Part shown: one piece after another, positions 3,914-64,000 of the stretch
How positions within the stretch are numbered: the stretch's first letter is position 1
Layout: every line of letters starts with the position of its first letter
The notes under the pieces: model-generated
Told to the model about the DNA's origin: nothing
The model's database searches: none
The model's input: the letters and a program-made list of their open reading frames with translations, nothing else
Source of the DNA: Salpingoeca rosetta
Taxonomy: Eukaryota; Protista; Choanoflagellata
Length of the DNA: 64,000 bases
Assembly (NCBI GenBank): GCA_033442325.1
Contig: JAWQFM010000004.1
Coordinates: forward strand, 1,249,293 to 1,313,292
Reading direction: 5' to 3'
Translations under genes and position numbers: made by a program

Positions 3914-5885
3914 TTATGCTGCGGATGAGGAGGAAGCTGGGGTTTGTGCGGATGCAAGTCGTTCAATCTGGGACCAGTCAGAGTGCCTGAGCGCTGGATC
4001 TTGCAGCTTCATGCCGCTCGCAAGCATCATCTTCTCGAAATCCTCCCACAAGGCATCGTGGGGCAGCGGCTGGGATTGCGTCACGTTGTGTAACGCCTGC
4101 TGCGGCTGTGTCACGCGGCGCACGGGCCGGGTGGGCGCCGCCGGCGACAGCACGCTTGGTCGAAACGACACGCCACTGTCGCCGCGGACCTGTGCAGGCT
4201 CCTGCTCCTGTTGTTGTTGTTGCTGTGGTGTAGGGGCGGCGGTGGCTTCCTCAGCCTGGGGGTGGTCGTGTTCAACGGCAACACTTGCTGGAGGCACCGC
4301 CGTCTCCTCATGTTGTGCTTGTACTGGTTCTTCTTGTGTTTGTTCCTCTTGCTGTTGCCGTTGCTGTTGCTCTTCTTCTGGCACCGTCGCTTCCTCTCCC
4401 TCCTCCTCCTCCTCCTCCTCCTCCTGTTCCTTCTGCTCCGCTGCTGCTGCTGCTTCTTCTTCTTCTTGTTCCTGTTCTTCCTCCTTTGCCGGCCTCGTGT
4501 CCGCAGCACCTTCAGACACCGGCTGCTCCTGCTGCTGCTCCTGGCCTGCTGTCGTGCCTTCTGCTAGTCCCTTCTCCTCCTTCTCTTCCGGCTCCTCCTC
4601 CTGCTGTTGTGCCTCATCAGCATCGCTCTTTGGTGGTTCTTCTTCCACAGCAGCTTGCTCTACTGCTGCCGCTGCCTCCTCCTCCTGCTGTTCTTCGTCC
4701 TCTTGGGCTGGCGCCTCCACCACGCCCTCCTCAGCACTTGGCTCAGGGGTGGTCTCAGTGGCGGCTGGCGTATCCTCCACTTCCTCCCCATACATCACCC
4801 GTTCCTCTTCTTCCTTGTCCGCAACAGCCGGCGCCTCTTCAGCAGCGGCCGGCGCCTCTTCTTCTTCTTCTTCCTCTGCACCTGTGCCTTGTTCTTGCTC
4901 ATCTGCAGCAACAGCAGCTGTTGTTGCTTCCTCCTCTTGCTCCTCTTGTTCTTGCTGCTGCTCTGCCTCCACTTGTGGGGCTTCAGTGTCCTCCGCCTCC
5001 ACTGGCTGCATCACTGCTTCCTCTTCCTCCTCCTCCTCCTCTTCTTGCTGTTGTGCGTCCTCCTGTGTGTGCACGACCGCCGCTTCCTCCTCCTTCTCCT
5101 GTCCCGTTTCTTCGTCAACCGCAGCCTCGACTGCACTCACCTCCTCCTGCCCCTTCTCTTCCTCTTGCCCCTTCTCTTCCTCCTCTTCTTCCTGCTGCTC
5201 TCCCTCTGTCTCCGCTGTTGCTGGCGCTTCTTGCTGCACCGTCTCCTCCTTCACTTCCGCCTGCTCCTCTTCACCAGCCTCCTGCACCTGTGGGTGTTTC
5301 TCCTCCACCACCTCCTCCTCCTGCTGTTGTTGGGCGTGTGGCGGCGCTGCTGTTGATGATGCCAGACTGCCGCCCTCAAACACGGGCGACAAAGCCTCAG
5401 ACTCTGTCGGGCTGATGGACGTGGTCGATTGGCCTGCACACACACACACATACACATTGAATCTTCGTGAGTTGTATTCAAGTCGTGGTGTGCCTGTGCA
5501 TACACGTTTGCTGTTACACTAACGCTCACAGCCACGTCCCTCCCTGCCTCACAAACACACGTTCATCATTCACAAACACGCCCTCGCGCCGTGCGCAGCA
5601 CCTGAGATTGAGGAGAGGGCGCTTGAGTCGAGGCCGAGCGAGTGCGATCCTTCATTCTTCGCCTTCTTCAGGCCGCTCATAATCGTCGCGAGCCGCTGCA
5701 GTTGCAACACAGGCGCGAAGGAGAGCACGCGCGCGCACACAAACGAATCAGCTCACAGTAGGTTCAGACAAAAGGGCAAACAGCACACACACACATGCAC
5801 TTGTACGAGGGTGTGTGTGTGCGGCTCTACATACCATGCACACACACACACACACACACAAACACAAACACAAACACAAACACAA

Positions 5886-43310: not shown

Positions 43311-55353
<12,043 letters not shown>

Positions 55354-56120
55354 CCTTCTGACGGGAAATGCCGTGCAAGGGATCGAAGCTTGTAGGAAAA
55401 GAGAGAGGAGAGAGAGATGGGGGCAGAGGGGGGCAGAGGGGGGGGGGGGTTGCTGTTGCAGTTGTGACTCGAGGAAGAGTTGTGGATGTGTGTCTTGATG
55501 TGACCACTCCAGCACTCGCTCAGGGCAGTGGTTGGCTTTTGTTGTTGTGCTCTTGTGCTGCGGAGCGAGAGGTAGTGAAATGTGGTTGATGATTTCCGTC
55601 AATAATCCATGAGCAACGGCCAAGAGGAAATTCGGCCAGCAAGCGAGTGGTGAGTGCTTGACAGTTGGTTGGTTGGTGCTCCTTGTTGTTGACACACCAA
55701 CCGCACCCATCTGTCTCTCTCTCCCTGCGACTCTCGTTGTGTTGGGTGTGTGGCTTGCTTGACAGTGTGTTTCACTTTGTGTGTGTGCATGTGTTAACTG
55801 CTGATAGTGTGTGAGGTGTGTCAGTGAGTGAGACGAGCGTTGGTTTCTTTTTTCTTTTTTTTTTGAGTGAGTGAGTGACGCTGCTTCCAGTGGCTGCATG
55901 GTGTTGTTTGTTCGTTATTGAGATTGTGGGGTTGAGTGGTCCCAATCGCTAGCACAGCAAGACGACGTGGATGGCTTCATGCAAACCACGGCTGCTCCCC
56001 TCATGCACAATCGTCCTCACGCGCGCGCACTCTCACGCACACTCCCTTTACCAACCACCATACAGGCTGGATTCCAAGGCTCAACGGACACGCAGCAAAG
56101 ACCACAACAGTGCCCAACCA

Positions 56121-56202
<82 letters not shown>

Positions 56203-56302
56203 NNNNNNNNNNNNNNNNNNNNNNNNNNNNNNNNNNNNNNNNNNNNNNNNNNNNNNNNNNNNNNNNNNNNNNNNNNNNNNNNNNNNNNNNNNNNNNNNNN
56301 NN
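56203..56302. other. Assembly gap (100 N) within (CA)n
   Basis: N run. Confidence 1.
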
Positions 56303-56452: not shown

Positions 56453-57057
56453 ATGGACCCGTATGGTGGCGGGGACAGCCCAGACTCTGACGATCGTCAG
56501 ATGTCCATCGCTGCGGGTCAACGCGTGCTGGCGAGACGGCGGCGAAGTCGCCAACGCGCTGCAAGAGAACAACAGCAACAGCAGCAAACTCAGCAGCAAA
56601 CGCAGCACAGCCGTGATGATGCGGGCACGTCCACATTCACGGGCCAGTCGCTCGCCTCGCTTCTGAGCCACGAGCCCGATTCATCTTACGGGGAGCAAGG
56701 GGGACAACAGTACTCCAGCGACGATGATCAACGCACAGTCGTGCCGTCCACAGAGCACTCGCCAAACCGCTCATGGGGCGACGCCGTGGATGTGCAGCTC
56801 TCCCGCAGTGACGACGACGACTCGTCTCGCAGCACCGACACCCAGCAGCAGCAGCAGCAGCAGCAACGGTTTCAGCATCTGCACCAACCACAACATCAAG
56901 AACAGGTGCAGTACGAACAACATCAAGGCCGACAACACCGCAGCGGATCGCCACTGCAGCAGCACGTGCTGTCGCCCTCGCCAGTGGCCTCCCCTGAGCG
57001 CGGCCCATCCCAACACGCTGCTGGCGCCCACGACGACTTTGATCCGGAGGTTGGCGC

Positions 57058-57145
<88 letters not shown>

Positions 57146-57303
57146 CTGGCAGAATTGCGCACCGAACACCGTGATTACCTTATTGTTTTCTGCAGCCCAA
57201 TTGATACAGTTCACACGAGCACAACGTCCCTCGCACGCCCACACTCGCACACTCACACTCACACACATGCATACTCGCACACTCACACACACACACATGC
57301 ATA

Positions 57304-57351
<48 letters not shown>

Positions 57352-58028
57352 TACATACTCATTCACTCCCTCACACACGCGTATCACACACGCGTATCAC
57401 AGATGTGGAATATCCAGCGGCAGGCGTCGCTGCGGCGCCGCATCAACAAGAGTGAGAACATCTACAAGGGCGCCGACAAGCTCTCAAAGGAGGTACACAC
57501 GCGTGCGTGTGCATGTGAGAGCATGTGTGTGTGTGTGTGTGTGAGCGTGTTTACAGCCCTGATAAGCAGTTGACAGTGAGGCGCAATCCCAAAGCTCAAG
57601 CAGCTGCTCACTATAATGCGCTCACACCACGGGTCCAATCACTATCCTATGCACACACAATCATACGCACACGTGACATGAACCATTCTCTCCCTCTCTC
57701 TTTGATGTGTGCGCGCTCGTGTGCAGGTGGCAAAGGATACGCGCAAAGATCTGCAGTACACGATGAAATACATGCGCGAGGACATTCGCCGGACAGAAAA
57801 GGTGCGATGATAATGGTGGTGGCGTTGGTGGTATTGATGGTGGTGATGGTGGTGTTTTGCTTTGTGTTTGAGGCGCGCACACGAAGCATGCATGCATGTG
57901 TGCGCGTGTGTTTGTGTGTCCGCGTTGCGACTTTCGCTTATGAGCGGGTGCTGCTTGCTCAAAAGTGCATGCATATTTTCTCTCACGCGCGTAACCTCGC
58001 CCCAACCACCATGCCACAACAAACCTCA

Positions 58029-58061
<33 letters not shown>

Positions 58062-61000
58062 ACACATACGCACACTTACACATACATTCACACACACATA
58101 CACACATTCACCGCCACAGGAGCTGGAGGATGTGGAGCGAATTGAGTACGCGTCATTTGACGAACTGCAGCGGCGGCTGTCAACGGAACTTCGCAAGCTC
58201 GAGGGCGCACGCAACCTTCGGCAGGTGCTGATGGTACAGCACCCTGAGCGAACAGCAGAGCTGGCGGAGGTGGAGAAGCAGATTCGCAATGCGCAGAGCG
58301 CTATCCGCGCCATCGAGGCCAGCATGCAAGGCGATGATGAGTCGTGGGAGGACGAGGACGAGGAGAAGGAGCACGCAGACACGTTTGACGTGCACGACGT
58401 CCCAAACTACCAAGACGCAAACGGCGGCAGCCACGCGCAGACAGCAGCAGCAGCAGCGACATCAACATCGCCGCTGCCGGGGGACGTGTCTGGCGCCTCT
58501 GCATCTGCACACAGCCTCCTTGGCGAGTCCCACAACTCGTCCACCAGCGCATTTGCGTCATCAAATGCGTCGCACTGGTCTGAGAGCGGCACCAACCCCG
58601 CCCTCGGCGCGTGGGTGGACAGGGATGAGGAGGCACTGGGGGACCTGCGGGCACGCATCCAGCGCGCGCTTGCGCTGACAGAGGCAGAGAGCGCACATGA
58701 GGAGATTCAGGGGCTGGGCGCACTGGCCAGCAAGCTGCTGCAGGAGCGAGAGGACTTGAAGCAGCAGCTGGCGCGGCTGCAGCACGGCGCGCAGGCGGAG
58801 AAGAAGCGGGCAGAGGACGCCGCCAACGACGAGAACAACGAGCTACTCAGGATGGTGGAGGATATGCAGGCCGAGCAGGACACCCTGCAGCAGCAACTCG
58901 ACTCGTACAAGGCGGAGACAGTGATGCTTGTTGACCACCTCAAGTCAGATCCCGACGGCACGCTCGTCCTCACCCACCGTGAGCTGCACGCCGTGTACAG
59001 GTGCACCGTTGACGCCCGCACGGAGCGCGCACAGCTGCAGCGGGCGCTGGAGACGTTGCGCAAGGACGTTTCATCCCTGGAGCAGGACGTGCTGGACCGA
59101 AACGGGCAAGTGGCCCGGCTCAGCGACGCCCTCAGCGCAGCACGGAACAACCTGCACATGACGCAAACCGACAAGACGCAGCTGGAGCACGTGCTCGCCA
59201 CAACAAAGGAGGAGCTGCTGACGGTGCAGGAATCCCGCGCCGCTGCCGGCGACGCCCTCTCCTCCCTTCAAGCGGACATGGACGACATGCGTGCGCGCCT
59301 GGCCGAAGAGCAGCAGCGCACGCGCGCACTGCAGGAGGAGCTGGATGCTGCGCGTGCCGGCGCCTCTGACAGCGCAGCCGCACAGGCTGTGGCGTGGGAG
59401 GACGAACGCCGTGCCTTGCAACAGGAGCGCGATAAACACGCCGAACATGCAAGGCGGGTGCAGAAGGAGCTGGCTGCCATGGAGCAGGAGGTGCTCGCAC
59501 AGGCCACCAGTGTACAGCGCTCGCAAGAAGAGATGCGTGACCACGTGACCAAGCTGGAGACCGAGCTGTCTGCCCTGCGGCAACGCCACACGGAGCTGCA
59601 GGCGCAGTACGAGGACGCACAGGCAAGCCTCGCCAACGCACAACAACAGCAGCAGCAGCAGCAACAACAACACGAGCAACATCAACAGCAGCAGGCCGAC
59701 AACAGCGTCAACAACAATGACAGCATGCGGGGCGGTTCTGAGTTGGATGCCACGTGGCAGGAGCAAAAGACAGAGCTCGAGCAGCAGCTGCGTGCGATCC
59801 AGCAAGAGGCTGACCGCTACAAGCACGCGTCGGAGGAGGCAGAGGCCACGCTTGCTGTGACGCGCAAGGAGCTGGAGAGCGCCCGCCACCACGCCGCACA
59901 CATGCGCACGCGCGACCGCACGTCCTCTGCACACAGCTCGTCCACGCAGCACACGGCCGAGCTGTCCCTGCCAGAGCCGCTGGCCACCAACCACCGCAAT
60001 TGGGTGCTGGGCATGCAGCACATGATGAGTCAGGACAAGCTGCGTGCCAAGGACCTGTTTGATCGCCTGGACAGCCACGGGCGCGGGTACCTGCAGCTGC
60101 GTGATTTCGAGCGCAGCCTCAAGTGGATTGACCTGAGCATGTCTGACCGGGAGCTGCGTGACCTCTTCAACCACATTGACCACAACAAGGACTCGCGCAT
60201 CGACTCGGACGAGTTCAAACGTGACATCAAGTACAAGTACAACAAGTCCCGCCACGACTACCATGGCCCTGAGGGTCACGCCCTGGGCGCCGTCCGCATC
60301 ACGCCGAGCCAATCAGAGGACTCGGACGCGTTTAGCATCGACCTGGACCAGCTGTCCACCGTGGACCAGTACCACACCGCCCTGCAGCGCGCGCTGTCCC
60401 GCCTGCAACAGCTGGAGCGGCAGCAGCGGCACGCACTTGACAGTGAAGATGGCAGCTCCCACGCGCGGTCGGCGTCACCATCCACCACAGGTGGAGGCAG
60501 CGGCACGGGTGACGGGAGCAACGTGCAGCGGCTGGAGCGGGAGAACCACGCACAGCGCAGCGAAATCAACTCGCTCAAGCAGCAGCTGCGGGATCTGCAG
60601 TTACAGCTGGACGAGGAGGCTGCGCGCAACCTCAACATGTCTGCAGACATGCGTCAGTTTGATGAGTCCATCAACGCCAGCTTCCGCAGCCCGGCCGAGC
60701 TGCGCATGGAGAATGCGCGACTGGCGCAAGAATTGGAGGAGGCCAAGGCCGCGGTGGAACAACTGTCCACCGCGCGCCAACGCCTGGAGGTACAGCACAA
60801 GGCGTACAAGCAGCAGATTGGCGACTTGGAGCAGGACGTGAAGCTGTACGGGGACGACGCAAAACGCCGCGATGCACACGAGGCGCAGATGGAGGCAGAC
60901 ATTGAGGAGCTGCGGGAGCAGATTGCCCAGCTGGAGAGCGAGAAGACGGCTGTTGGCCGCACGCTCGCACAGGCGGAAGCACGGCTGGCGGCACAGGCTG

Positions 61001-64000
61001 AGGAACAACGCATGACCGCAGCAGATGCACAGCGCACGCTGGAGCAGACGCAGCGACGGCTGCAGGAGGCCGAGGCAGAGAAGGACACACTGCAGGCACG
61101 CGTGCGGGAGGAAGAGGAGCGTGCGGCGCGCCTGAAGCAGCAGCTTGCTGACATGACCGACCAGTTCCAGGCAGCAAGCACGCGCGCAGAGGAGACGGTG
61201 CAGTCGCAGATGCAGCGCGACCAGGAGGTGACGCAGCTGCGGGAACAGCTGGCCAAGGCGAAGAACGAGGCGCAGGTGGCCCAAACACGCCTCAACGCAG
61301 AACAACAGCGAGCAACGGCGCTGCAGGCCGAGAACGACGGGTTTGTGCGGCAGCTGAAGGAGAAGCAACGCGAGATTGAGCAGCAGCAGGCAGACATGCG
61401 CACCATGTACGACGAGCACACAAAGGTGCTGGCGCGCTGCGAGGTGCTCACCAGCCAGGCCGACGGGCTGGAGCTGGACAAGGTTGCGCAATCGGAGGAC
61501 ATGGACAAGCTCAAGGCGCGCGTGGAGGCGCTGGCGCAGGAGGCCGAAGACAAGAAACGCGAGGCGCAGCGGCACCAGGAGGAGTTGAAGCGCGTGATCC
61601 AGGCAAAGAACGAGACGGCCACCGAACGCGACCTGGTGCGCAAGCAGCACGAGGACCTCTCCCGGCGGCTGGCGGACCTGCAGGCGCAGTACGACGGCTT
61701 GCAGGCTGACCACGACGCAGCGCTGGCCACGTGCGATGAGCTCAAGCGCAAGCTCACGGCCGCGGAGGACCAGGCAGCCAAGGCACGGGAGCAGGTGCGT
61801 GGTGCTGAGGAGCGTGCTGCCTCCCTTGATGAGAAGTGCACGCAGCTGCGCAGTGCAGAGCATGCAACGCACGACAAGCTGTCGCGTGTGGTTGAGGAGC
61901 GGCAGCAGCTGCGTGATGACTTGGAGCAAGCGGTGCAGCGGGCAGAGCGAGCCGAGCGCGACGCACAGGACCTGCGCAACGACGTGCGGGCGGCGCGGCA
62001 GGAGCGAGACGACCTGTTGAAGGCACTGGATGAGGCAAAGTCGAGCAGCAGCGAGGCGCAGCAGAAGGTGCAGGAGGCCGAGCGCGCTGCCAGGGACGCG
62101 CTTGCTGCGCGCGTGCAAGAGCTTGAGCAGCAGAAGGACGAGGAACACAAGCGGTGGCAGCGTGAGGTGAGCGAGCTGCAATCCACGCTGGCAGAGCAGC
62201 GCGGAGAGGCGCGCCAGCTGCAGGCCTCGCTGCGACAAGCAGAGGACAGGCTGTCCGCCAGCATTGAGGAGCGAGAGCGCCTCAAGCACGAGCTGCAAGA
62301 GGCGGAGTCTCGGGCCGAGGGCGCAGCGGCAGCCACACGCACCGCTGAGCAGGATCTTCGGGAGCAGGTGGCCCGTGCTGAGGAGCGGTGCAAGCAGCTG
62401 GAGGAGGAGCAGCAGGCGCTGCGGGACAAGTGCAAGAAGGCCGAGTCCGCCGTGGCCAAGCGCGACGCGCTGCACTCCAACAAGGAGGCCATGTACGCCA
62501 AGCAGATGGAGGGCTTCCAGTTTGAGACGCAGCAGTGGCGCGCGCGAGCAGAGACATATAGCTCGCAGCTGGATGAGTTGCGGGCACAGCTTGCGCAGCG
62601 GCAACAGGAGTATGACACGCTCGCCCAGGAGAAACGCGCCGCCGCCACTGCTGCTGCCAGTGATGCAACCGGGTCCACAGGTACGGTGCAGCAGCAGGAG
62701 TATGATGACGCGATGAACACGCTCAAGGACACGATGAAAGAGCTCGAGAAGGCCAAGGTGGAGGTTGCGCGGCTGGAAGAGGCGGTGGCGTTGCGCCAGC
62801 GCGCGATTGAGGAGCGAGACGGCCGACTGGAAGACGTGGAGCGGGAGCTGGTGCACCTGCGAAGTGAGGTGGCCACGCTCGATGCAGACCTCTCACTGAA
62901 GAACTCGTACATCGAGGACCTTGAGGCGGCAGTGAAGGATCGCAGAGGATACGCGTCCTCCACGGGCCGCCAGTCTGCCACGTCGCTCGTGTCGTCTGTG
63001 CCGGGGGTGGTGTCGCCGTCATCGCGTGCTGACTCATCGCCCTCGCAGCACACAGAGCACTCGCCACCGGCCTTTGCACACGAGCGCGCTGGCCGCAGCG
63101 GCGTTGGTGGTGGTGATGGTGTTGGCGGTGGTGATGGTGTTGGCGGTGGTGGCGCCAGCAGCACGGACGATGAAGTCGGTGGTGCGCAGGTGACGGCTGC
63201 GGGCGAGGGCCAGCGGAAGCGCGGTCCACGCCGCCCACGTCCGGGCTACCCTTCCTCAACCGCCATGACGCCCTCAACGACGACAGAGGCGTACCGCGAC
63301 CCAAGGTACGTGCCCGCGGAGGAGGCGCGCGTTGCGCAAGAGGAGCGTGATCAGTACGAGCACAGGATTGCGGGCCTGAAGGAGCAGGTTGTGAAGCTGA
63401 GGGAGGCGCTGCAAGCTGCACGCGCAGAGGTGGACACGGTCACCCGCAACCACGACCTGCACATCCAGCACTCGGAGGCGCGCGTGAAGGCGCTCAACGA
63501 CGAGCTGGCGACGCAGCAGGCGGAGTATACGCGCGAGCTGGAGCTTGAGAAGAAGAACCACAGGCAGGATGTCGATGCGCTGGAGGCGAAGCTGAAATCG
63601 CAGGTTGAGCGGCACGAGGAGGCGTGCAAGGGTCTCAAGTACCGCATCTCCGCAGACGGCAAGGAGCTGTCCACGCTCAAGCGGCGGCTTGATGAATCGC
63701 AGAACTCCCTCAACGAGCTCATCCAGCAGGAGCTGCGGACAGTGCAGCACCTGCGCGCGTTTGTGGCCTGCCACGACTACCGGCCCATGGAGGTGCACGA
63801 CGGGTGTGACCGCAGCACCGAGCTGCCGTTTGACCAGGGCGACCTGGTGTATGTGGTTGGCAGCGCAGACACGGACGGGTACTTTGAGGCGATTGTGCCT
63901 GGCCGCCGCGGCCTCGTGCCCAGCAACTACGTGGAGGAGCTACAGCTGAGCAGGGACGAGCTTGTGCGCAGCGCGCAGAGCAACAAGCCGCTGTGGAACT
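56453..64000 (+). CDS. Very large coiled-coil protein with two HR1-like repeats, an EF-hand pair and a RIM-binding-protein-type SH3 domain; 3'-partial; exons 56453-57049, 57403-57492, 57727-57801, 58120->64000
   Basis: All three introns are phase 0 GT-AG. Frame +1 from 58120 is open wherever checked and is missing from the ORF track because it runs off the window. HR1-like: LRRRINKSENIYKGADKLSKE|VAKDTRKDLQYTMKYMREDIRRTEK|EL and LQRRLSTELRKLEGARNLRQVL...LAEVEKQIRNAQSAIRAIE. EF-hands: LFDRLDSHGRGYLQLRDF and LFNHIDHNKDSRIDSDEF. SH3: FVACHDYRP...ELPFDQGDLVYVVGSADTDGYFEAIVPGRRGLVPSNYVEEL. Confidence 0.88.

What the first reader, a model, noticed from the sequence alone, without database searches (positions are those of the whole stretch)
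56453..64000. Hidden >2200-aa protein joining Rho-binding HR1-like repeats, an EF-hand pair and a RIM-BP-type SH3 domain
Seen: a gene absent from the ORF track, with two HR1-like helical hairpins (about 57403-58325), long coiled coils, an EF-hand pair (about 60040-60230; the second loop DHNKDSRIDSDE is canonical) and an SH3 at about 63755-63945. Known: the long RT-loop insert and the ELP...VxGxxDxDG(F/Y)...RGLVPSN pattern are typical of RIM-binding proteins, which are active-zone scaffolds that tether Ca2+ channels. HR1 repeats bind Rho GTPases in PKN and rhophilin. Animal RIM-BPs are not known to me to carry HR1 or EF-hands. Inference: a pre-metazoan scaffold that couples Rho signalling and direct Ca2+ sensing to a proto-active-zone or secretion module.
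Basis: partly seen in the sequence, partly recalled or inferred. Interest (0 to 1): 0.75.

Follow-up and report, generated by a model that had tools for sequence, protein, structure and literature searches.

The report
Pericentrin-like giant with EF-hand and SH3
The hidden gene is real, but it ends outside the window in a centrosome-targeting PACT domain, so it is most likely this protist's pericentrin-like basal-body scaffold carrying an extra calcium-binding EF-hand pair and a RIM-BP-type SH3 domain, not a forerunner of the synaptic RIM-binding protein.

Summary
The gene exists. It has six GT-AG exons and 3,778 codons. Exon 3 is one 2,888-codon open frame that runs off the window end.

- **EF-hand pair:** confirmed above Pfam's cut-off. 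The second loop is canonical and the first is degenerate.
- **SH3 domain:** confirmed, and it is RIM-BP-type. The five best solved-structure matches are all RIM-BP SH3 domains, and in a 1.84-billion-protein search everything after the one orthologue matched only the SH3, in two or more stretches; the five I scanned are RIM-BPs.
- **HR1:** only one hairpin is detectable, and it stays below threshold (26 bits against 33.1). A structure model and language-model neighbours agree with HR1. The orthologue and a profile search against solved chains do not.
- **RIM-BP reading:** it fails. Downstream there are no FN3 repeats and no further SH3 domains. Three frame-preserving introns lead instead to a full-length PACT domain (75.7 bits), the only one in the genome. 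A separate SH3-FN3-SH3-SH3 gene on contig 17 is the RIM-BP-like gene.
- **Relatives:** one orthologue was found, an unidentified eukaryote in a public sequencing run, with identical intron positions.

Best reading: a pericentrin/AKAP450-like centrosome or basal-body scaffold with added signalling modules, a new variant of a known kind. Another first-stage note of this scan (s1-442281) saw the same SH3-plus-PACT link on the overlapping window. The contig is not human. Exons were searched one by one and never joined.

The parts
56453..57049 (+). Exon 1 (199 codons). Starts at the ATG; low-complexity, Q/S/D-rich, no Pfam match.
   Evidence: The open frame and the donor GAG|GT are. The orthologue L007 begins and ends its exon 1 in the same way. 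No Pfam family matched.
57403..57492 (+). Exon 2 (30 codons).
   Evidence: Acceptor CAG| and donor GAG|GT, both in phase 0. Conserved in L007:886-975. No Pfam match on its own.
58120..64000 (+). Exon 3, the part inside the window; mostly coiled coil. The whole exon has 2,888 codons and ends beyond the window at L003:3076 (L003 position 1 = window 63709).

The rest of the gene lies outside the window and cannot be listed as parts:
- exon 4, L003:3281-4136 (coiled coil);
- exon 5, L003:4303-4615;
- exon 6, L003:4905-5717 with a TAG stop at 5718-5720. It holds the PACT domain at L003:5373-5684 (G000:C4:1318373-1318684).
   Evidence: The frame has no stop. It is 34% identical over its whole length to P0001. 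Pfam gives only coiled-coil noise such as tropomyosin.

The downstream junctions are GT-AG and keep the frame. PACT_coil_coil scores E 3.9e-21, 75.7 bits against a cut-off of 25, over profile positions 1-77 of 77. It is the only match above the cut-off in the genome. ESM Atlas neighbours are PACT clusters.
58159..58329 (+). HR1-like helical hairpin, below the family threshold.
   Evidence: Pfam HR1 at 26 bits, E 9.3e-6, against a cut-off of 33.1. It is the best HR1 candidate in the genome. The AlphaFold2 hairpin has pLDDT above 90. Foldseek lists TOCA1, PKN1 and CIP4 HR1 domains, but at E above 0.1. The nearest ESM Atlas clusters are all HR1.
59968..60273 (+). The most conserved block of the protein: a leading helix plus the EF-hand pair (Pfam match at 60043-60222). 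Loop 1 is degenerate. Loop 2, at 60178-60213, is canonical.
   Evidence: EF-hand_7 at 41.2 bits against a cut-off of 30. The block is 78% identical to the orthologue. PDB matches are centrin, calmodulin and radial spoke protein 7. The AlphaFold2 topology is a helix followed by two EF-hands, mean pLDDT 66.
63751..63942 (+). Single SH3 domain of RIM-BP type, with a long RT loop. A conserved helix runs directly into it.
   Evidence: SH3_9 and SH3_2 are above their cut-offs. The top five PDB matches are RIM-BP SH3 domains at 9e-12 to 2.4e-9, against GRB2 at 4.5e-7.

Best explanation
This is the organism's single PACT-domain gene, a pericentrin/AKAP450-like giant coiled-coil scaffold of about 3,778 residues.

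**Inferred mechanism.** From what is established for the family, the C-terminal PACT domain anchors the protein at the centriole or basal-body wall and binds calmodulin. The long coiled coil extends outward as a platform for pericentriolar and microtubule-organising material.

**What is different here.** Three extra modules sit in the rod:
- an N-terminal HR1-like hairpin, possibly a docking site for a small GTPase;
- a strongly conserved EF-hand pair with one canonical Ca2+ loop, probably a built-in Ca2+ switch;
- one RIM-BP-type SH3 domain, probably a docking site for a proline-rich RxxPxxP-type partner.

**Shown:** the exon structure, the domains, their conservation in a second species, the single PACT locus and the separate RIM-BP-like gene.

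**Inferred:** localisation, Ca2+ binding, SH3 ligands and any GTPase binding.
For: - **One open frame.** A single 2,888-codon frame holds the hairpin, the EF-hands and the SH3.
- **Consistent gene model.** All five introns are GT-AG with GT-rich 5' ends, and four of the five have CA-rich 3' ends. Every junction keeps the frame. The total is 11,334 nt, or 3,778 codons. Exon GC3 is 0.66-0.90 against intron GC of about 0.5.
- **PACT domain.** Full length in the last exon at 75.7 bits, and the only one in 55 Mb. ESM Atlas neighbours agree.
- **Orthologue.** P0001/L007 has the same exon 1-3 borders and the same donor after '...ILE'. Similarity drops at once beyond that donor, so the gene continues downstream in both species. 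Conservation peaks at the EF block (72%) and at the SH3 with its leading helix (54-62%).
- **Family function.** PACT targeting, calmodulin binding and SAS-6 binding are described in PMC6559791.
- **SH3 ligands.** RIM-BP SH3 domains bind proline-rich motifs of RIM and CaV channels according to PMC7456537.
Against: - No transcript evidence was available, so the link between exon 3 and the PACT exons rests on frame-preserving splice sites alone.
- The orthologous contig ends 230 bases after exon 3, so it cannot confirm the link.
- No CM1 (gamma-tubulin-complex-binding) motif was found in this gene.
- Outside the PACT domain there is no detectable similarity to animal or fungal pericentrins.
- HR1 is below threshold, weak in the orthologue (14 bits) and not recovered by a two-sequence profile against solved chains.
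- Only one orthologue is known.
Confidence: 0.8

Rival explanations
1. There are two adjacent genes: a coiled-coil gene with the EF-hands and the SH3 that ends at or just after exon 3, and a separate short PACT gene made of exons 4-6.
For: No transcript data were available. The orthologous contig stops before the downstream exons. Exon-by-exon searches cannot prove the linkage.
Against: - Reading through the exon 3 donor adds only repeat-derived residues and then a stop.
- The donor position is conserved in the orthologue, and similarity ends exactly there.
- The gap to exon 4 is 204 bases and has this gene's typical intron make-up.
- Exon 4 starts in mid-codon at an AG acceptor and the frame closes exactly.
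Confidence: 0.08
2. One reading: a RIM-BP orthologue or proto-active-zone scaffold that tethers Ca2+ channels and secretion machinery.
For: The SH3 is RIM-BP-type by sequence and falls on the RIM-BP side of a small SH3 tree.
Against: - It has one SH3 instead of three, and no FN3, Ig_RIMBP2 or RIMB1_N domain.
- Its C-terminus is a PACT domain.
- A separate SH3-FN3-SH3-SH3 gene on contig 17 matches RIM-BP SH3 domains more strongly, at 8.7e-19.
- A RIM-BP has already been reported from a choanoflagellate (PMC7565545).
Confidence: 0.03
3. An AKAP450-like tether that acts mainly at the Golgi or at another non-centriolar microtubule-organising site, with the PACT domain playing a secondary part.
For: The PACT family includes AKAP450, which also acts at the Golgi (general knowledge of the family, not tested here). 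This gene has no CM1 motif.
Against: It is the only PACT gene in the genome. If the organism has a pericentrin function at all, this gene most simply supplies it. No Golgi-targeting feature was detected.
Confidence: 0.07

Closest known systems
Pericentrin / AKAP450 (AKAP9) / Drosophila PLP / fission yeast Pcp1 / budding yeast Spc110 (PACT-domain family)
   Same: It is a giant coiled-coil protein with a full-length C-terminal PACT domain. Both conserved halves that carry the calmodulin-binding sites can be seen by eye. It is the sole such gene in the genome.
   Different: - It carries an internal EF-hand pair, a RIM-BP-type SH3 and an HR1-like hairpin. I know of none of these in described family members, and no paper in the searchable library combines these terms.
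- No CM1 motif was detected.
- A His-rich insert splits the PACT domain.
RIM-binding proteins (RIMBP1/TSPOAP1, RIMBP2, RIMBP3, Drosophila RBP)
   Same: The SH3 sequence type matches, including the long RT loop and the DG(F/Y)...RGLVPSN signature. The best PDB matches are at 9e-12 to 2.4e-9. RIM-BPs fill the top of the 1.84-billion-protein search. A coiled coil leads into the SH3.
   Different: It has one SH3 instead of three, and no FN3, Ig_RIMBP2 or RIMB1_N domain. It has a PACT end. The genome has its own RIM-BP-like gene elsewhere.
HR1 (antiparallel coiled-coil finger) domains of PKN, rhophilin and TOCA1/CIP4
   Same: It is a two-helix hairpin of the right length. HR1 is the best Pfam family. 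HR1 structures appear among the top Foldseek rows. The nearest ESM Atlas clusters are all HR1.
   Different: It scores below Pfam's gathering score and is weak in the orthologue. No solved HR1 chain was found by profile. Other helical hairpins score equally well in Foldseek. GTPase binding is untested.
Centrin / calmodulin-type EF-hand pairs, and EF-hand-bearing centrosomal coiled-coil proteins such as ninein (the ninein comparison is from my own knowledge)
   Same: An EF-hand pair sits in a centrosome-type coiled-coil protein. The best single-domain PDB matches include centrin and radial spoke protein 7.
   Different: The pair lies internally, about 870 residues from the predicted start, and only one loop is canonical. 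No orthology to ninein was shown.

Membership tests
Pericentrin/AKAP450 (PACT) family | C-terminal PACT domain above Pfam's cut-off | tested here: met
   PF10495 at 75.7 bits against a cut-off of 25, E 3.9e-21, profile positions 1-77 of 77, in the last exon, which ends 34 codons after the match. Genome search: 76.9 bits.
Pericentrin/AKAP450 (PACT) family | Very long coiled-coil body upstream of the PACT domain | tested here: met
   About 3,500 residues rich in A, E, R, Q and L. Pfam gives only coiled-coil-type noise, such as tropomyosin and intermediate filament. No dedicated coiled-coil predictor was run.
Pericentrin/AKAP450 (PACT) family | PACT and the upstream domains lie in one transcript | tested here: inconclusive
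   The GT-AG junctions keep the frame and the total is divisible by three. The donor is conserved in the orthologue. No RNA data were available.
Pericentrin/AKAP450 (PACT) family | N-terminal CM1/SPM motif that binds the gamma-tubulin complex (present in the fungal members) | tested here: not met
   A six-frame genome search with PF07989 at E up to 10 gave no match in this gene. As far as I know this feature is not required of the animal members.
Pericentrin/AKAP450 (PACT) family | Localisation at the centrosome or basal body, and calmodulin binding | not testable with these tools
   This needs tagging in cells and binding assays. The family behaviour is described in PMC6559791.
RIM-binding protein family | Three SH3 domains | tested here: not met
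   Pfam finds one SH3 in the whole of exon 3 and none downstream.
RIM-binding protein family | FN3 / Ig_RIMBP2 repeats between the SH3 domains | tested here: not met
   There is no fn3 or PF25523 match in any exon. True RIM-BPs show both, and the contig 17 gene has an fn3.
RIM-binding protein family | RIM-BP-type SH3 sequence | tested here: met
   The top five PDB matches are RIM-BP SH3 domains. Per-domain scores are 41-65 bits for RIM-BP SH3 domains against 10-32 bits for other multi-SH3 proteins. In the tree it falls on the RIM-BP side, but support is weak (SH-aLRT 79) and its place there is unresolved.
HR1 domain | Pfam HR1 match above the gathering score | tested here: not met
   26 bits against a cut-off of 33.1, and 14 bits in the orthologue.
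HR1 domain | Antiparallel two-helix hairpin fold | tested here: inconclusive
   A confident hairpin model aligns to PKN1 HR1b at TM 0.66/0.82. However, all Foldseek E-values are above 0.1, and ribosomal and GreA-type hairpins rank alongside. ESM Atlas neighbours are all HR1, at 0.89, which is a lead only.
HR1 domain | Binding of GTP-bound Rho-family GTPase | not testable with these tools
   This needs a pull-down assay.
EF-hand pair | Pfam EF-hand_7 above the cut-off, with a canonical 12-residue loop | tested here: met
   41.2 bits against a cut-off of 30, and 35.5 bits in the orthologue. Loop 2 has D, N, D, I, D and E at positions 1, 3, 5, 8, 9 and 12. Loop 1 has H and R at positions 3 and 5.

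The most novel reading that the evidence does not exclude
The RIM-BP-type SH3 and the EF-hand pair make this basal-body scaffold a Ca2+-sensing docking site for a proline-rich partner at the base of the flagellum, such as a voltage-gated Ca2+ channel tail or a RIM-like protein. If so, the SH3 module that tethers channels at animal active zones would also work at the ciliary base in the closest relatives of animals, which would link the evolution of active-zone and basal-body scaffolds.
Probability: 0.06. Interest if true: 0.8.

Novelty: new variant of a known kind. Interest (0 to 1): 0.45.

Why it matters
- **Marker caution.** A RIM-BP-type SH3 domain is not a safe marker of active-zone ancestry. 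Here it sits in the genome's only PACT-domain centrosomal scaffold, while a proper RIM-BP-like gene lies elsewhere.
- **Centrosome evolution.** It is an example of the pericentrin family taking on signalling modules (Ca2+, SH3 docking, perhaps a GTPase) in a lineage I infer to be choanoflagellate.
- **Testable ideas.** It suggests Ca2+ control of basal-body microtubule organisation, which could be tested in an organism that can be transfected and edited.
- **Limits.** It is known from only two genomes and its function is entirely inferred.

Tried and rejected
- **Word search, SH3 region of the big exon.** Nothing found.
- **Word search, EF region.** Only the same orthologue, P0001.
- **Two metagenome scans with conserved peptides of the EF and SH3 blocks.** No relatives.
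- **HR1-like piece against solved chains.** The single sequence gave no HR1 chain, and so did the two-species profile.
- **PACT exon against solved chains.** Only His-tag noise.
- **A possible internal SH3 ligand.** An RxxPxxP motif lies about 170 residues upstream of the SH3 in this species, but the orthologue lacks it, so I dropped it.
- **Pfam on exon 1, on the neighbouring 793-codon minus-strand frame and on a downstream frame.** Nothing.
- **Literature.** No hits for PACT with Salpingoeca, for PACT with SH3, EF-hand and pericentrin, or for the sequencing run of the orthologue.
- **EF-block structure model.** It reached only pLDDT 66, so I did not search folds with it.
- **Not done by rule.** The third SH3 of the contig 17 gene is split by introns, so I left it out of the tree.
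Full report
**Where the window lies**

The window is G000:C4:1249293-1313292 of a 55.4 Mb eukaryotic assembly in 68 contigs. It has GT/CA microsatellite-rich introns and GC-rich exons. It is not human. I take it for a choanoflagellate such as Salpingoeca rosetta from genome size, intron style and gene content. That is my inference and was not tested.

**The observation**

On the + strand a stop-free frame runs from 57847 to the last base of the window. The ORF listing does not show it because it leaves out frames that run off the end, which explains why the gene was 'absent from the ORF track'.

I fetched the next 20 kb. The frame continues to L003:3076, so exon 3 has 2,888 codons. Upstream, the ATG at 56453 opens a 199-codon exon that ends at GAG|GT (57049). 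A 30-codon exon follows at 57403-57492, and exon 3 begins at CAG|GAG (58120). All three junctions are in phase 0.

Pfam on the exon, given by reference, finds:
- EF-hand_7 at E 2.2e-10, 41.2 bits against a cut-off of 30, at window 60043-60222;
- SH3_9 at E 1.3e-9 and SH3_2 at E 4.7e-8, near 63810-63940.

The loop DHNKDSRIDSDE starts at 60178 and has the canonical ligand positions. The first loop has H and R at positions 3 and 5, so it is degenerate.

**What lies downstream**

There are none.

- Exon 3 ends at G|GT (L003:3076; L003 position 1 is window 63709).
- A 204-base intron leads to exon 4 (L003:3281-4136). It has a (GGTT)n-rich 5' end and a CA-rich 3' end.
- A 166-base intron leads to exon 5 (4303-4615).
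- A 289-base intron leads to exon 6 (4905-5717, then TAG).

Every junction is GT-AG, and the split codons close exactly. The six exons sum to 11,334 nt, or 3,778 codons. Exon GC3 is 0.66-0.90 against intron GC of about 0.5.

Exon 6 holds a full-length PACT domain: PF10495 at E 3.9e-21, 75.7 bits against a cut-off of 25, covering profile positions 1-77 of 77. A six-frame search of the whole genome finds this as the only PACT match above the cut-off. Language-model neighbours of exon 6 are PACT clusters.

**Relatives**

A whole-length word search found one relative, P0001 (2,919 aa, 34% identity, 97% coverage), which has the same EF-hand and SH3 families. It lies on a 10.8 kb genomic contig of 41% GC from sequencing run SRR14727191.

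- That contig has the same exon 1, 2 and 3 borders.
- It has the same donor after '...ILE', and similarity stops immediately beyond it. This argues that the gene continues past exon 3 in both species.
- The contig ends 230 bases later, so it cannot confirm the PACT link.

Conservation is uneven. It reaches 72% in the EF-hand block and its leading helix, and 54-62% in the SH3 and the helix that runs into it. It is about 40% in the first 100 residues, and 10-25% in several linker stretches.

Further searches found no other orthologue: two more word searches, a profile search of 1.84 billion representative proteins and two metagenome scans.

**The SH3 domain**

- **Solved chains.** The five best matches are all RIM-BP SH3 domains: Drosophila RBP and human RIMBP2, at 9e-12 to 2.4e-9. 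The next is GRB2 at 4.5e-7. The alignments run through the long RT loop and the DG(F/Y)...RGxVPxN signature.
- **Large library.** After P0001, every listed hit matched only the SH3 part, in two to six stretches, mostly three. All five that I scanned are RIM-BPs, with Ig_RIMBP2 in each, fn3 in four and RIMB1_N in one.
- **Per-domain scores.** The ranking by summed score favours multi-SH3 proteins, so I rescored by domain. RIM-BP SH3 domains give 41-65 bits and other multi-SH3 proteins 10-32 bits.
- **Tree.** A 90-row SH3 tree puts the two orthologues together (SH-aLRT 96) on the RIM-BP side. The split from four other multi-SH3 proteins has only SH-aLRT 79, and their place among SH3-I, II and III is unresolved.

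So the SH3 type claim holds, with modest phylogenetic support.

**A separate RIM-BP-like gene**

Searching the genome with this SH3 found two SH3 domains in one 757-codon frame on contig 17, on the minus strand. That frame reads SH3, FN3, SH3. A third SH3 follows, split by introns, and coiled coil lies upstream. Its SH3 domains match RIM-BP SH3 domains at 8.7e-19.

A RIM-BP has been reported from the choanoflagellate Monosiga brevicollis (PMC7565545), so this gene is the expected RIM-BP homologue. The gene under study is therefore not the RIM-BP orthologue.

**The HR1 claim**

In favour:
- For window 58120-58350, HR1 is the best Pfam family (26 bits, E 9.3e-6). That is about 300-fold better than the coiled-coil noise below it, but under the gathering score of 33.1.
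- The same stretch is the best HR1 candidate in the whole genome.
- AlphaFold2 on the two-species alignment gives a confident two-helix hairpin, with pLDDT above 90 over residues 11-60.
- Foldseek lists TOCA1, PKN1 HR1a and HR1b, and CIP4 HR1 domains among the top rows.
- The ten nearest named ESM Atlas clusters are all HR1, at score 0.89 with 197 shared features, which the tool rates as a lead only.

Against:
- All Foldseek rows are at E above 0.1, and ribosomal and GreA-type hairpins rank alongside.
- The orthologue scores only 14 bits.
- No solved HR1 chain appears at E up to 10, either for the single sequence or for the two-species profile.
- The supposed first hairpin depends on the 30-residue exon 2, which matches nothing alone.

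I rate one HR1-like hairpin as plausible, about 0.6. Two hairpins are not shown.

**Other family features**

- No CM1 motif (PF07989) was found in this gene.
- The EF-hand pair resembles centrin, calmodulin and radial spoke protein 7.
- A low-confidence model (mean pLDDT 66) shows an extra helix in front of two EF-hands.
- By eye the PACT domain keeps both conserved halves that carry the calmodulin-binding sites described in PMC6559791. A His-rich insert splits them.

**Mechanism**

The best-supported reading is a pericentrin/AKAP450-like scaffold. The PACT domain anchors it at the centriole or basal-body wall and binds calmodulin (family knowledge; PMC6559791). The coiled coil forms the platform.

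The lineage-specific modules would add intrinsic Ca2+ sensing, SH3 docking of proline-rich partners and possibly GTPase input. RIM-BP SH3 domains bind such motifs in RIM and CaV channels (PMC7456537). All of this is inferred; nothing about function was tested.

**Novelty**

I found no paper that combines a PACT domain with an SH3 or an EF-hand, and no other protein with this SH3 flank in the large library. I file it as a new variant of a known kind.

A first-stage note on the overlapping window (s1-442281) had already flagged SH3 plus PACT in one polypeptide. My tests agree with it.

Noticed in passing
G000:C17:about 842700-846000, minus strand (L016:3717-6783): A separate gene has the RIM-BP architecture: upstream coiled coil, then SH3, FN3, SH3 and an intron-split third SH3. 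Its SH3 domains match RIM-BP SH3 domains at 8.7e-19. It is probably this organism's RIM-BP homologue.
   Followed up: partly
window 57050-57402 and 57493-58119; L003:3077-3280, 4137-4302, 4616-4904: All five introns of the gene start with GT- or GGTT-rich repeats, and four of them (all but L003:4616-4904) end in CA-rich tracts. None shows an evident polypyrimidine tract. Notes s1-433637 and s1-442106 describe the same pattern.
   Followed up: partly
window 56203-56302 (also 43614-44134 and 45915-46026): These are runs of N, i.e. assembly gaps. The 100-base gap lies 150 bases upstream of the start codon and is flanked by (CA)n, so the promoter region is incomplete.
   Followed up: no
window 60601-63164, minus strand: Open frames of 751 and 836 codons lie antisense to exon 3. 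They are most likely shadow frames of the GC-rich, purine-biased coding strand and not genes.
   Followed up: no
window 53518-55899, minus strand: A 793-codon open frame diverges from the gene's start. It has no Pfam match.
   Followed up: partly
L003:about 5540-5620 (beyond the window end): A His/Arg-rich insert of about 27 residues lies inside the PACT domain, between its two conserved halves.
   Followed up: no
P0027 (1,004 aa): A protein with five SH3 domains, from the large-library search, groups on the RIM-BP side of the SH3 tree. RIM-BP-type SH3 domains may therefore occur in further architectures.
   Followed up: no
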